64,000 nt of DNA from Schmidtea polychroa (Eukaryota), in contig CM097886.1 of NCBI GenBank assembly GCA_044892525.1, positions 15,810,001 to 15,874,000 on the forward strand, read 5' to 3'. The position numbers and the translations under genes are program-made. Below are positions 52,901 to 56,969 of this stretch, piece after piece. Position 1 is the stretch's first letter. Each line of letters starts with the position of its first letter. The notes beneath the pieces are model-generated. The model was not told where the DNA came from and did not search any database. It saw nothing but the letters and a program-made list of their open reading frames with translations.

Positions 52901-55900
52901 GTTTGTAATAATTTTGGGTCGTTTTATCGAAAATAACCGATTTTATAAGCCAATCCTTGTGAATTTTTGGCGAGGAAATAAACAGAATTGATATACTATT
53001 CTAATATAATTAGTAATGATAATAAAATTTCGAAAGTTTTGAAAACAGATGTTAATTATTTGTAATTCAAAATTTAAAATAAAATCAAAACATTTAGGAA
53101 TATCAAATAAATAGCACTTTGTACATTTTTGAGTTTTTTTAAATTTTTTAATTATAAAGAATTCTCAATTTTTATCTTTTTATCCGTTTCATGAATATAA
53201 TTTTGATTTTGTTGATTTGTTATTGTTATTATGATTAACTCATATTCTTCGGAAATAAGAAATATATATATATATATGTGTGTGTGTGTGTGTGTGTGAT
53301 TATGTTGCGTAAGTAATCATTTGATAACACTAAACGAATATGGGTTAATAAATAATAAAATATTATTCAGTCAGTATTTAAATTATTCCAGTTGGAACTT
53401 ATTTTAAACAAAAAGATAATTTTATATTCTATTTAGATTCATTTGATACAAAATTGATAGACATGGAACGCGCAATAACCAATTTCCACCAATATGGGTT
53501 GTAGGAAATGTTGAAATAGAAAATCACTGAGAAGTACGAAATTCTAGTAGTTTACAAGCATTCCTAGAAATGTAAAATGTCAAGTTGAAGGCCCTGAAGC
53601 TATTGGTAGTTTCATACATTTAATAATATCGACATATAAAGAGAATAAATCAATGTTTTCCTTACCGTTTTTCATTTCCGTAGGATTTTTGAGCAACTTT
53701 GGCATGGAGAATTATCAAAATATGATCTCGAGGATCTTGTAAATATTTCCTCATTAAGTCTTTAGTTAATCTTCGAATTGTGTTATTGTTTTCGGGACTG
53801 GAAATAAAAATAAAATTGATAAAATCAATCGAAATTTGTCGTTGTAAATTCTAGATTTTACCTATTGTTTTTTCTGAGATTACAAATAATTTGATGAGTG
53901 TTGTTGTTGTTATTGTTATTATTAACATTGGTATGGTGTGACAACGGCAGTGCAGCAGTGTAGGGAATTCCTCCATTTTGTGTTAAATTCGGATCTTGTT
54001 CTGAATTAATAGCAAATTAGAGAAATTTAAAAAGTCGGTTGTAAAACTTCAATCTTAAATTTAATCTAAAATGGGAAAAAACGAAAAACACCCGCTTCGA
54101 ATTCTTTGACCGGATACAAAGGTACAATTATAATCGTAAGGGCAGATGAAGTACCTAGACATCAAAACAGATTATGAGGAAATGGGTTCCGGATCAAATA
54201 AGCAATATTATTATCAAAAAATGGCATGAATTATGCAATAGAAATGACAACTCACCGTGATTAATGGACGTGAAAGAGGAGAAATCAAAATTATTATTAT
54301 CAATACCATTATGATTGAACAACAACGCAGATTCATTAACGACACCGCCGATGAGTTGATTGCGATAATAATTCGTTGAATGCATTAAAATAACAAACGA
54401 TTGAATAATCAGTCCATGGCAAGAGGCAGCATTTATTATTGATAACGCAGAGACGGCTTTGTTTAGAATTTTGAAGCTCAAAAATCGTGACAACGATTGT
54501 GAATATGAAATAATCGCGCAACGACAACTAGAACGACGACAACGACGACGACTACAAGTGCTGTAGGAATATCAAGTGAGTTTGCACGACGAATATAAAT
54601 GCACAACGCAATCTCACCCGAGCTTTATTTCTCATACTGCTTGACACACGACAGTGAGAATTGTGGGATGCGAATGCTCTACCTTATGACGCCGACCAAT
54701 TCAATTATTGGAGATAGAGAGAGAGGCAGAACAATGACGAGCGGCAGCTGGATTATACAATCAATTTTCCCACAATACATTAACCACAGCCAATATATAA
54801 TCATTGATGCACTTTAACAATATAACAACGCTGGTAACCAAAAGAATAAAACATAATAAAACACAATAATAATAATAATAATTATTATTATTATTATTAT
54901 TATTATTATTATTATTATTATTATTATTATTATTATTATTAAATGTTATGATAAATAGCATAAAAAATATAAAAAAATAAAACAAAGTCAATAAGAAGGG
55001 AAACAAAAGGAAAAAAAGTCAATCAAAGAAGATTAGCTAAATGTTATATTTGAGTGAACAGGACTTAATATAGATCGAAAATTTTCAATTAATAAACACT
55101 ATGGAAAAGGCTTATTTTAATAATTTTCTAAAAATAATTCCTCTACTAACAATTTTTCATAGTTTAATAATAATTATAAGTTCAATAATAATTAATATTA
55201 TTATTATTATTATTGTTTTTATTTACTTCTTTCTACGTTATTTAATTTTGGTTTTATCTTTTCTTTATTTTTTTCTCATAAAGATAAATTAATAAATTTG
55301 AAGAGAAAATTACCTAAATCAATTATAAATAGATTAAATATCGAAAATATTTATCAATCTATTTAAAATTTAAAGATTTTAGAATATTTTAATAAATGAG
55401 TGCCAAAATCAGAGGTCTATTAAAGTATGATACTTTCGTATGAAAATGTATGTTCTGTGTAGTTTGAATGGATCAGAATTAGCATTTAATGTTAAATGGT
55501 TTTGTTTGCATCAGAACACGGTTTCACTTCTCAAAGGGAATGACGATCGCATTTTATTGCTGGTTTTGTAATCGTCACGGAACCGAAAATGTATATAAAA
55601 ATATTGAAGGAAAATTGATATTTAATAAAGAGAATACGTGTCCAACGTTGGAGAATGAAAATTTATCTAGGTTTCTTTTTAATCCGTTTCTACAAAGATT
55701 ATGTTACATTTATCAAGTTCTTTCTAAAATTTCATAATTATTTTTGTATTCATCTGAATTTCTAATAATAAATTATATACACATTTTCGTAGTAGTTTCA
55801 CATTTGAATTGTAAATGATAGTTTAAATTTCGTCTTAATTTGACACAAACCCAAATTTGGAGGGTACGAGGACTACTCTTTTTTTACATTTCCATTTCAA

Positions 55901-56969
55901 ACACTAATTTAATGTGAAAACGGGAATTTTTTCTAATATTTCAATTCTTTTGGTCAACTTTTGAAAAGAAACCTCGTTAATTTCACTATTCCAACTGGAG
56001 GGCAAATAAGATTTGCATTCACTCGAGTATAAAGCTCTTTAAAAAATTCATATATTTTTAAGATAAGAAATTGGAAGCTGTAGTTAGTAGAAATAAGAAT
56101 AGAGTTAAACTGCAAGAAACCCGTTTCCATCATTAATTTACTACTAATGAAAAGAAAAAAAATTAAATTAAAAACAACAAAAATTGTGAAAATTGCAAGA
56201 ATTCAATGAAACTTGGTATTAATAAATAATTAAAAATCAATAAATTATTTAATCAAATTATGTAAAATTATCAGTTTAATTCAAATGAAATAAAGCTCGA
56301 AATCCTATATTATTTCTATAACTGATAATATCAGCAAAACTAATATAATTAAAAAATAATTAAAATTTTAATAACAATCGATTGATTTATCGGCTGACCT
56401 TGGGATGGGTTGTTCAATTTGAATGAGTTGATGTGGTTACTATCGGAATTGTCATTTAGAAGATCGTTCATTTTCAGATCCGTCGAACCGATGGGACTTC
56501 GCAAATCTAATGGCTCGAAAGTTGGTTCTTTGTTAACTGAAAATGTGCGATCCAGATGATCGGAATATTTGTAGTTGAACGTACAACAGTTCGCAGCAGC
56601 TGTGTGATTAGTTGATATGTTGTTGTGGAAATCATTGTTGTGATTAGTGACATTGGGTTTCTGGGGAAATGAGTCGACACTTAGTTTGTACGATTCGATA
56701 TCAGGATGGTGAGTGGTCGTGTGCATAATTTTCGTTCGAGGTGCAAAAATGTAATCATCATTCATTGTTAGTCGTTTTCTATCGACTAGTAATCCATTAG
56801 ATGGGTTGTACGACCAATTGGAATCAAATCCTTTATTGATAGGATTTGAATATTGAAATAAAGGCTGATCAGTGCATGACATAAAATCTGGCTGATTTGG
56901 AAGCATCAAATCATTGGAAATGTTTCCCAAATATGTCATCGAATTATAGCCATTTAAGTTATTGTTCAT
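40901..56969 (-). CDS. Su(H): Suppressor of Hairless / RBPJ (CSL) transcription factor, long isoform about 716 aa
   Basis: Exons 56969-56399, 54000-53862, 53797-53666, 50574-50457, 50408-50159, 42298-42048, 41999-41688 and 41278-40901. Phases are consistent and sum to 2151 nt; one acceptor A falls in an N gap. Invariant CSL motifs: [89 protein letters not shown]. Confidence 0.95.
42720..43145 (+). mobile_element. Mariner remnant in a Su(H) intron
   Basis: [39 protein letters not shown] resembles the mariner C-terminus (YSPDLAPSDFHLF..LKK.L.G.RF). A TIR-like AAACTTTTCAAATGACCC follows. Confidence 0.78.
47740..48300. promoter_or_regulatory. Putative intronic enhancer or promoter with three YGTGRGAA CSL sites
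   Basis: TGTGGGAA at 47828-47835, TTCTCACA at 47878-47885 and TTCTCACG at 48215-48222. Locally GC-richer non-coding island with TGACGT and ATTGG motifs. Confidence 0.45.
51243..51437. mobile_element. piggyBac-type MITE
   Basis: TTAA on both sides. Imperfect TIRs CCCATTCAGACC and GGTCTTAAGGGG. Confidence 0.7.
54256..54385 (-). CDS. Su(H): Putative alternative (proximal) first coding exon of Su(H)
   Basis: ATG at 54385 opens [20 protein letters not shown]. The exon ends at a consensus donor CACG|GTGAGT in phase 1, matching the acceptor at 54000. Confidence 0.62.

What the first reader, a model, noticed from the sequence alone, without database searches (positions are those of the whole stretch)
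54256..56969. Two alternative Su(H) first exons, only one carrying a CtBP-type PLDLR motif
Seen: the distal exon (56969-56399) encodes a 190-aa low-complexity N-terminus containing EPLDLRSP (PLDLR at 56513-56499). A second ATG-bearing exon (54385-54256) lacks the motif, and both end in phase-1 donors compatible with the acceptor at 54000. I found no phase-1 acceptor in the 190 nt upstream of the proximal ATG, so it looks like a first exon rather than an internal one. Known: PxDLS/R motifs bind the co-repressor CtBP. In flies Hairless supplies this motif, and direct motifs in some protostome Su(H) proteins have been reported (from memory; verify). Inference: promoter choice could switch this CSL between an intrinsically repressive and a non-repressive isoform.
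Basis: partly seen in the sequence, partly recalled or inferred. Interest (0 to 1): 0.75.

Follow-up and report, generated by a model that had tools for sequence, protein, structure and literature searches.

The report
Two first exons in planarian Su(H)
A flatworm's only Su(H)/CSL gene (the Notch pathway's transcription factor) has two alternative first exons, and only the main one adds a conserved 190-residue head carrying a docking motif for the co-repressor CtBP, so promoter choice may decide whether the protein can repress genes by itself.

Summary
On the minus strand lies a single-copy CSL/Su(H) gene of a planarian. Spliced RNA contigs join exon 1a (57068-56399, ATG 56969) to the shared acceptor at 54000 in three runs of this species and one run of a sister species. 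One run also joins exon 1b (54647-54256, ATG 54385) to the same acceptor. Both introns are GT..AG.

Exon 1a is under strong purifying selection (79% amino-acid identity to a distant relative, dN/dS about 0.04). Its [11 protein letters not shown] island is kept in that relative and in Procotyla fluviatilis, where Miller et al. 2019 already list it as a Su(H) CtBP motif. PIDLRS is an experimentally validated CtBP motif. The genome encodes a CtBP whose peptide-binding N-terminal part is about 80% identical to rat CtBP.

Exon 1b keeps its ATG, frame and donor in three taxa despite indels, and sits behind a 122-nt block that is 86-97% conserved. Its peptide is only weakly constrained, its leader has three upstream ATGs, and a single RNA run supports its junction.

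The repressive versus non-repressive switch is plausible but untested. The motif is known; the motif-less promoter isoform appears to be new.

The parts
56399..57068 (-). Exon 1a, the distal and major first exon. 5' UTR about 57068-56970; CDS 56969-56399 (190 codons plus 1 nt, phase-1 GT donor).
   Evidence: ORF. RNA contigs start at 57068 (X2) and 57038 (X1) and are spliced 56399|54000 in X1, X2, X3 and X5. 79% amino-acid identity to L001, dN 0.11, dS 2.55.
56496..56513 (-). PLDLRS, a CtBP-type short linear motif (residues 153-158 of the 1a isoform), inside the conserved island [12 protein letters not shown].
   Evidence: The island is identical in P0001/L001 and in Procotyla fluviatilis, Table 1 of PMC6777938. 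PIDLRS is validated as a CtBP binder.
54256..54647 (-). Exon 1b, the proximal and minor first exon. Leader 54647-54386 with three upstream ATGs; CDS 54385-54256 (43 codons plus 1 nt, GTGAGT donor).
   Evidence: X1 contig 2 covers 54647-54256 and is joined to 54000. ATG, frame and donor are kept in L001 (38 codons plus 1, 15-nt in-frame deletion) and in organism B (45 codons plus 1).
54677..54798 (-). Conserved block 30-150 nt upstream of the 5' end of the 1b contig; candidate internal promoter. It holds ATTGG 54794-54790, E-box CAGCTG 54750-54745, CCAAT 54711-54707, ATTGG 54700-54696 and the TATA-like CATAAGG 54688-54682.
   Evidence: 75/87 and 34/35 identical to L001, against 74.5% for exon 1a DNA. 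The promoter role is inferred from position and motifs.
54767..54774 (-). Single CSL-consensus site TGTGGGAA inside the conserved block.
   Evidence: present here and at the aligned place in L001 (1030-1037). The window-wide count of such sites is not above chance (10 found, 5.8 expected).
54409..54432 (-). Upstream ORF of 7 codons in the 1b leader.
   Evidence: The start, the length and the stop position are the same in L001.
53862..54000 (-). Exon 2, shared by both isoforms.
   Evidence: Junctions 54000|56399, 54000|54256 and 53862|53797.
53666..53797 (-). Exon 3, the start of the conserved CSL core (ends ...[12 protein letters not shown]).
   Evidence: The contigs continue into the FFCPPPC exon below the N run.
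40904..50575 (-). Remaining CSL exons: LAG1-DNAbind about 50575-50157, BTD 42314-41670, TIG_SUH 41278-40904. N runs 50576-50757 and 41289-41462 were left untouched.
   Evidence: Pfam hits with E 1e-23 to 6e-31; open frames.

Best explanation
This is the single Su(H)/CSL gene of a planarian, transcribed from two promoters.

The distal promoter gives the main mRNA. Its first exon adds a 190-residue, probably disordered but strongly constrained N-terminal module. That module carries one PLDLRS motif that docks the co-repressor CtBP, which is the direct co-repressor recruitment described for protostome Su(H).

A conserved internal promoter about 2 kb downstream gives a minor mRNA. Its first exon supplies only an ATG and a loosely constrained peptide of about 40 residues, spliced in frame to the same exon 2. 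The resulting CSL protein has an intact DNA-binding and Notch-binding core but lacks the N-terminal module and its CtBP motif.

Shown: both exons, both junctions, the shared acceptor, conservation of the motif, of the 1b frame and of the upstream block, and the presence of a CtBP gene. Inferred: CtBP binding, translation of the 1b mRNA, and a difference in repression.
For: - RNA junctions for both first exons, both GT..AG and both using one acceptor.
- The X2 and X3 contigs link exon 1a to the CSL core. Pfam finds LAG1-DNAbind, BTD and TIG_SUH in the downstream exons.
- The gene is single-copy in the 781-Mb genome, which agrees with one su(H) in planarians (PMC11801701).
- Exon 1a: dN/dS about 0.04 against L001. 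The [11 protein letters not shown] island is flanked by indels yet invariant in three taxa.
- PIDLRS is necessary for CtBP binding in D. simulans Bootlegger and is reported for HPC2. PVDLS in Strigamia Su(H) binds CtBP in vitro.
- A CtBP ortholog lies on G000:C2 near 30.30 Mb (E 4e-54). Its N-terminal exon is about 80% identical to the rat CtBP of 1HKU/1HL3.
- Exon 1b: ATG, phase-1 GTGAGT donor and open frame are kept through a 15-nt deletion (L001) and 3+3-nt insertions (organism B). L001 has in-frame stops just upstream of its ATG.
- The upstream block is 86-97% identical, more than the coding DNA.
- No other PxDLS-like motif occurs in the gene.
Against: - The 1b junction is seen in one run of one study only, with 29 nt on the exon 2 side. 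It is absent from X2 and X3 and not seen spliced in organism B.
- Contigs cannot give transcript starts or levels.
- The 1b leader has three upstream ATGs and a T at -3 of the start codon.
- The 1b peptide is weakly constrained: 45% identity, dN/dS about 0.55, with dS lower than in 1a. The conservation may therefore be of DNA or RNA rather than of protein.
- CtBP binding of PLDLRS was not tested here.
- The strong constraint across all 190 residues means the motif may not be the main difference between the isoforms.
Confidence: 0.6

Rival explanations
1. Exon 1b marks a minor or regulatory transcript that makes little or no protein. It could be promoter noise, or a uORF-controlled or decay-prone RNA. 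The conservation would then reflect an intronic enhancer or promoter element rather than a second protein isoform.
For: One supporting run only. Three upstream ATGs, one in a uORF with conserved position, and a weak start context. dN/dS about 0.55 and a lower dS than exon 1a, as expected for constraint at the nucleotide level. The adjacent non-coding block is even more conserved.
Against: ATG, reading frame and phase-1 donor are kept in three taxa. All indels are multiples of three: 15 nt in L001, and 3 nt plus 2+1 nt in organism B. The splice uses the coding acceptor in frame. Outside the indel patch, organism B shows 3 synonymous changes and 1 replacement in the exon.
Confidence: 0.22
2. Both isoforms are made, but PLDLRS is not a working CtBP site in planarians. 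The 190-residue head would have another main role, such as stability, localisation or other partners, so promoter choice would change something other than intrinsic repression.
For: The whole head is under strong constraint, not only the motif. Position 5 is R rather than the canonical S. No planarian binding data exist. The complex prediction gave no verdict. No Pfam family or Atlas relative explains the head.
Against: The motif island is invariant across planarian families while its flanks carry indels. PIDLRS binds CtBP. The part of CtBP that holds the peptide cleft is nearly identical to the rat protein. Miller et al. class this very motif as a CtBP motif.
Confidence: 0.15
3. Exon 1b is an internal cassette exon spliced between exon 1a and exon 2, not a first exon.
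For: One in-phase AG with an open frame exists (exon start 54456).
Against: That AG has an A-rich tract in place of a pyrimidine tract. The RNA contig runs unbroken from 54256 up to 54647, and no 1a-1b junction was seen. L001 has two in-frame TGA codons between the equivalent AG and its ATG.
Confidence: 0.03

Closest known systems
Direct CtBP recruitment by protostome Su(H) (Miller, Movsesyan, Zhang, Fernandez, Posakony 2019, eLife 8:e48115; PMC6777938)
   Same: [quoted passage not shown] Their Table 1 lists the planarian Procotyla fluviatilis with the same [11 protein letters not shown] island. No GSLTPPDKV Gro motif in flatworms, here too.
   Different: That work treats the motif as a fixed part of the protein. 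Here a second, conserved first exon yields an mRNA that skips it. The paper's text holds no mention of isoforms or first exons.
Mammalian CSL/RBP-J kappa isoforms that differ only in the 5'-most exon (Li and Leder 2007, PMC1995199; RBP-2N)
   Same: Separate transcription starts, each first exon with its own ATG, all spliced to a common exon 2, with cell-state-specific use.
   Different: No co-repressor motif is known to be toggled there. The mammalian first exons encode only a few residues, whereas here one encodes a constrained 190-residue module.
PIDLRS-type CtBP motifs (human HPC2; D. simulans Bootlegger, bioRxiv 10.1101/2024.10.05.616775)
   Same: P-phi-D-L-R-S with R at position 5 and S at position 6. 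Point mutants in the Bootlegger motif abolish CtBP binding.
   Different: L instead of I at position 2. Different host proteins. Binding not tested for the planarian sequence.
Drosophila Hairless adaptor
   Same: The outcome is the same: CtBP brought to DNA-bound Su(H) for default repression (abstract).
   Different: Hairless is a separate protein confined to Pancrustacea. Here the motif is in Su(H) itself, and its presence depends on the first exon used.

Membership tests
CSL / Su(H) / RBPJ transcription factor | LAG1 DNA-binding (RHR-N), beta-trefoil and TIG (RHR-C) domains in one gene | tested here: met
   Pfam PF09271 (1e-23), PF09270 (9e-22 and 3e-27) and PF20144 (6e-31) on downstream exons. 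RNA contigs link exon 1a to them.
Protostome Su(H) with direct CtBP recruitment (Miller et al. 2019) | [quoted passage not shown] | tested here: met
   PLDLR at residues 153-157 of the 1a isoform, upstream of the core. Position 5 is R, as in the planarian entry of their Table 1.
Protostome Su(H) with direct CtBP recruitment (Miller et al. 2019) | Motif conserved among related species | tested here: met
   [11 protein letters not shown] is identical in the window, in P0001/L001 and in Procotyla. Organism B could not be read at this place.
Protostome Su(H) with direct CtBP recruitment (Miller et al. 2019) | Motif-dependent physical binding to CtBP | not testable with these tools
   It needs a pull-down. 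The complex prediction gave no verdict.
Protostome Su(H) with direct CtBP recruitment (Miller et al. 2019) | A CtBP partner with an intact PxDLS-binding region in the same genome | tested here: met
   G000:C2 about 30.30 Mb: E 4e-54 to human CtBP1/2. The N-terminal exon is about 80% identical to the rat CtBP of 1HKU/1HL3. The identity of the cleft residues is from memory.
Alternative-first-exon (alternative promoter) isoforms | Two mutually exclusive 5' exons, each joined to the same downstream acceptor in RNA | tested here: met
   Junctions 56399|54000 (4 runs) and 54256|54000 (1 run).
Alternative-first-exon (alternative promoter) isoforms | Independent, capped transcription start for the proximal exon | tested here: inconclusive
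   The 1b contig ends at 54647 with no upstream junction and no AG before it, and it sits behind a conserved block with CCAAT and TATA-like motifs. Contigs cannot show a true 5' end.
Alternative-first-exon (alternative promoter) isoforms | Translation of the second isoform | tested here: inconclusive
   The frame, ATG and donor are kept in three taxa. Against that stand the uORFs, the weak start context and dN/dS about 0.55.

The most novel reading that the evidence does not exclude
The internal 1b promoter is itself Notch/CSL-responsive. It carries a perfectly conserved TGTGGGAA site 17 nt from a conserved CAGCTG E-box, upstream of CCAAT boxes. Signal-receiving cells would then switch their Su(H) output from the CtBP-recruiting isoform to one that cannot recruit CtBP. 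That would be a feed-forward loop lifting default repression at the level of the transcription factor's own isoform.
Probability: 0.1. Interest if true: 0.8.

Novelty: new variant of a known kind. Interest (0 to 1): 0.5.

Why it matters
CSL proteins repress Notch targets until the signal arrives. How that default repression is built differs between flies (the Hairless adaptor), mammals (SHARP and others) and other protostomes (motifs within Su(H) itself).

If a planarian can make Su(H) with or without its built-in CtBP motif by choosing a promoter, repression strength becomes a regulated, cell-type-specific property of the factor. No separate adaptor would be needed.

Planarians have one su(H) gene, and Notch signalling acts in their neuron-glia regeneration (PMC11801701). 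Exon-specific RNAi is practical because exon 1a is 571 nt and exon 1b with its leader is 392 nt. The idea is therefore directly testable.

The finding also shows that the 190-residue head is strongly constrained and is more than a linker.

Tried and rejected
- Complex prediction: two exon-encoded pieces of the planarian CtBP with a 40-residue piece around PLDLR. No verdict, so it counts neither for nor against binding.
- Homologue searches with the 190-residue head found one relative in each library (P0001). The second hit, P0002, is a 4382-residue low-complexity match and was ignored.
- A search with the 43-residue 1b peptide found nothing. Short products are probably not in that collection.
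- Pfam and the ESM Atlas (best score 0.78) do not place the head in any family.
- A single-sequence AlphaFold2 model has mean pLDDT 36. This fits disorder but is weak evidence.
- The window-wide count of YGTGRGAA is not above chance (10 found, 5.8 expected). Only the conservation of the one site near exon 1b is notable.
- The PLDLR codons of organism B could not be read, because the list of differences was truncated.
- L001 ends in a repeat before reaching exon 2, so conservation of the acceptor could not be checked.
- Considered and rejected: exon 1a as a separate gene (contigs join it to the CSL core) and exon 1b as a cassette exon.
- N runs were neither filled nor looked up.
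Full report
What is there. The window is AT-rich (about 28% GC). It lies at G000:C2:15810001-15874000 of a 781-Mb genome. On the minus strand sits a CSL/Su(H) gene. Downstream exons match Pfam LAG1-DNAbind, BTD and TIG_SUH with E-values of 1e-23 to 6e-31. The gene is single-copy in the genome, and so is its first exon. This agrees with the report that planarians have one su(H) homologue (PMC11801701). 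I infer that the organism is a triclad planarian, because the motif island found here is the one published for Procotyla fluviatilis. The species itself was not determined.

Checking the observation.
- ATG 56969 opens a frame of 190 codons plus one base, ending at 56399 before GT.
- PLDLR is encoded at 56513-56499 and is followed by S.
- ATG 54385 opens 43 codons plus one base, ending at 54256 before GTGAGT.
- An AG acceptor precedes 54000.
- Joining either exon to 54000 keeps the frame into ...EQDPNLTQ... and on to the CSL core.

RNA evidence. Contigs from four public runs were laid on 53400-57600.
- The junction 56399|54000 (2398 nt skipped, GT..AG on the gene strand) stands in X1, X2 and X3 of this species and in X5 of a sister species.
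- The X2 and X3 contigs (2307 and 2117 nt) run from 57068 or 56894 through exon 1a, exon 2 (54000-53862) and exon 3 (53797-53666), and on into the FFCPPPC exon. Exon 1a is therefore part of Su(H), not a separate gene.
- The junction 54256|54000 (255 nt skipped, GT..AG) stands in one 421-nt contig of X1. That contig covers 54647-54256 without interruption plus 29 nt of exon 2.
- The contig's 5' end at 54647 is not preceded by AG, and no upstream junction was seen.
- In X1 the mean word depths were 153 for the 1a contig and 29 for the 1b contig. This fits a minor isoform, but contig depth is not a measure of expression.
- X2 and X3, which are shallower runs, did not assemble exon 1b. X5 holds only unspliced sequence there.

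Is exon 1b a first exon? I scanned for AG acceptors that would let it serve as an in-frame cassette between exon 1a and exon 2. Three points argue against its use: the 20 nt before it are A-rich rather than pyrimidine-rich, the RNA contig reads through it, and the relative L001 has two in-frame TGA codons 6-7 codons before its ATG. The first-exon reading stands.

Conservation. One relative of the 190-residue head was found: P0001, on a 2005-nt genomic Logan contig, L001.
- Across exon 1a, 146 of 185 aligned residues are identical. dN is 0.11 and dS is 2.55, which is strong purifying selection along the whole head. It is not a low-complexity filler.
- The stretch [12 protein letters not shown] is invariant, while indels of 7, 1 and 1 residues lie just beside it. 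That is the signature of a short linear motif.
- The same island stands in Procotyla fluviatilis Su(H) in Table 1 of Miller et al. 2019.
- L001 also reaches the exon 1b region. ATGCATTCAACGAAT (MHSTN), the open frame and CACG|GTGAGT are kept. The exon is 38 codons plus one base after a 15-nt in-frame deletion.
- I rebuilt organism B's exon 1b from the differences listed by read laying. It has 45 codons plus one base, with insertions of 3 nt and of 2+1 nt that restore the frame. Outside that patch there are three synonymous changes and one replacement (one substitution of that contig was not listed).
- The 1b peptide itself is only 45% identical to L001. Its dN/dS is about 0.55 and its dS is lower than in exon 1a. 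What is conserved is the start, the frame and the donor rather than the residues.

The internal promoter. The block 54798-54677 lies thirty to 150 nt upstream of the 5' end of the 1b contig. It is 75/87 and 34/35 identical to L001, more than exon 1a coding DNA at 74.5%. The rest of the 1a-1b intron is not alignable.
- The block holds two ATTGG and one CCAAT, a TATA-like CATAAGG about 35-41 nt before 54647, an E-box CAGCTG, and one CSL-consensus site TGTGGGAA (54774-54767). All are conserved.
- Such CSL sites are not enriched in the window as a whole.
- I read the block as the 1b promoter; this is an inference. Its possible control by Notch is only a lead.
- The 1b leader has three upstream ATGs. 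The 7-codon uORF at 54432 keeps its start, length and stop in L001.

Is PLDLRS a CtBP motif?
- Miller et al. show that PVDLS in centipede Su(H) binds CtBP in vitro in a motif-dependent way. They class the planarian PLDLR as the same kind of motif.
- R at position 5 followed by S is validated elsewhere. PIDLRS is needed for CtBP binding by D. simulans Bootlegger and was reported for human HPC2.
- The genome has a CtBP ortholog on C2 near 30.30 Mb. Its first coding exon is about 80% identical to rat CtBP/BARS, the protein of PDB entries 1HKU and 1HL3. From memory, that exon covers the region that forms the PxDLS cleft, including the alanine and valine whose mutation abolishes peptide binding.
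- No other PxDLS-like, RRT, WRPW, eh1 or GSLTPPDKV-like motif is present in either N-terminus. No PxDLS-like motif occurs in any frame of the rest of the gene.
- A complex prediction gave no verdict.

Comparison with what is known. The motif in planarian Su(H) is published. Alternative first exons in CSL genes are known in mouse, where the isoforms differ only in the 5'-most exon, each with its own ATG, and are used in a cell-state-specific way (PMC1995199). I found no description of a conserved second promoter in a protostome Su(H) gene whose product lacks the built-in co-repressor motif, either in Miller et al. or in planarian Notch papers. I therefore rate it a new variant of a known kind.

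Verdict. The existence of a translated 1b isoform is likely but rests on one RNA run plus comparative evidence. CtBP binding is likely by analogy. The repressive versus non-repressive switch is an attractive, testable inference and is not shown.

Noticed in passing
window 54409-54432 (-): A 7-codon upstream ORF in the exon 1b leader keeps its ATG, its length and its stop position in the distant relative L001, although most residues differ. It may control translation of the 1b mRNA.
   Followed up: partly
window 54677-54798 (-): This non-coding block is more conserved than the neighbouring coding exon. It holds a CSL site (TGTGGGAA) 17 nt from an E-box (CAGCTG), plus CCAAT/ATTGG boxes. The arrangement recalls the Su(H)-plus-proneural code of Notch target enhancers (from memory).
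   Followed up: partly
window 50576-50757 and 41289-41462: Two N runs abut CSL coding exons: one just upstream of the FFCPPPC exon and one just upstream of the LNGGGD exon. They were left as they are. By comparison with the usual CSL sequence, no coding residues seem to be missing across them.
   Followed up: no
G000:C2:30302743-30303525 (L014:6744-7525) and onward: CtBP ortholog of this genome, with at least four coding exons. The first two encode residues 1-87 and about 89-246 and are very close to vertebrate CtBP1/2.
   Followed up: partly
G000:C2:18678204-18678728 and 18689868-18690392: Two tandem, apparently intron-less 525-residue open frames with a full 2-Hacid_dh_C domain lie 11.6 kb apart. 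One has an internal TAA. Their identity was not examined.
   Followed up: no
G000:C1:104456837-104458906 (+) and 104521603-104524655 (-): An inverted pair of glyoxylate/hydroxypyruvate reductase-like genes about 63 kb apart (the PDB match was run on the + copy only).
   Followed up: no
window 55787-55957: A 171-nt low-depth RNA contig (X1, depth 2.4) inside the 1a-1b intron. It could be unspliced precursor or an unrelated small transcript.
   Followed up: no
window 47828-48222: Three YGTGRGAA matches lie within 400 nt in the large intron, the place another first-stage note calls a CSL site cluster. The window-wide count is not above chance.
   Followed up: no
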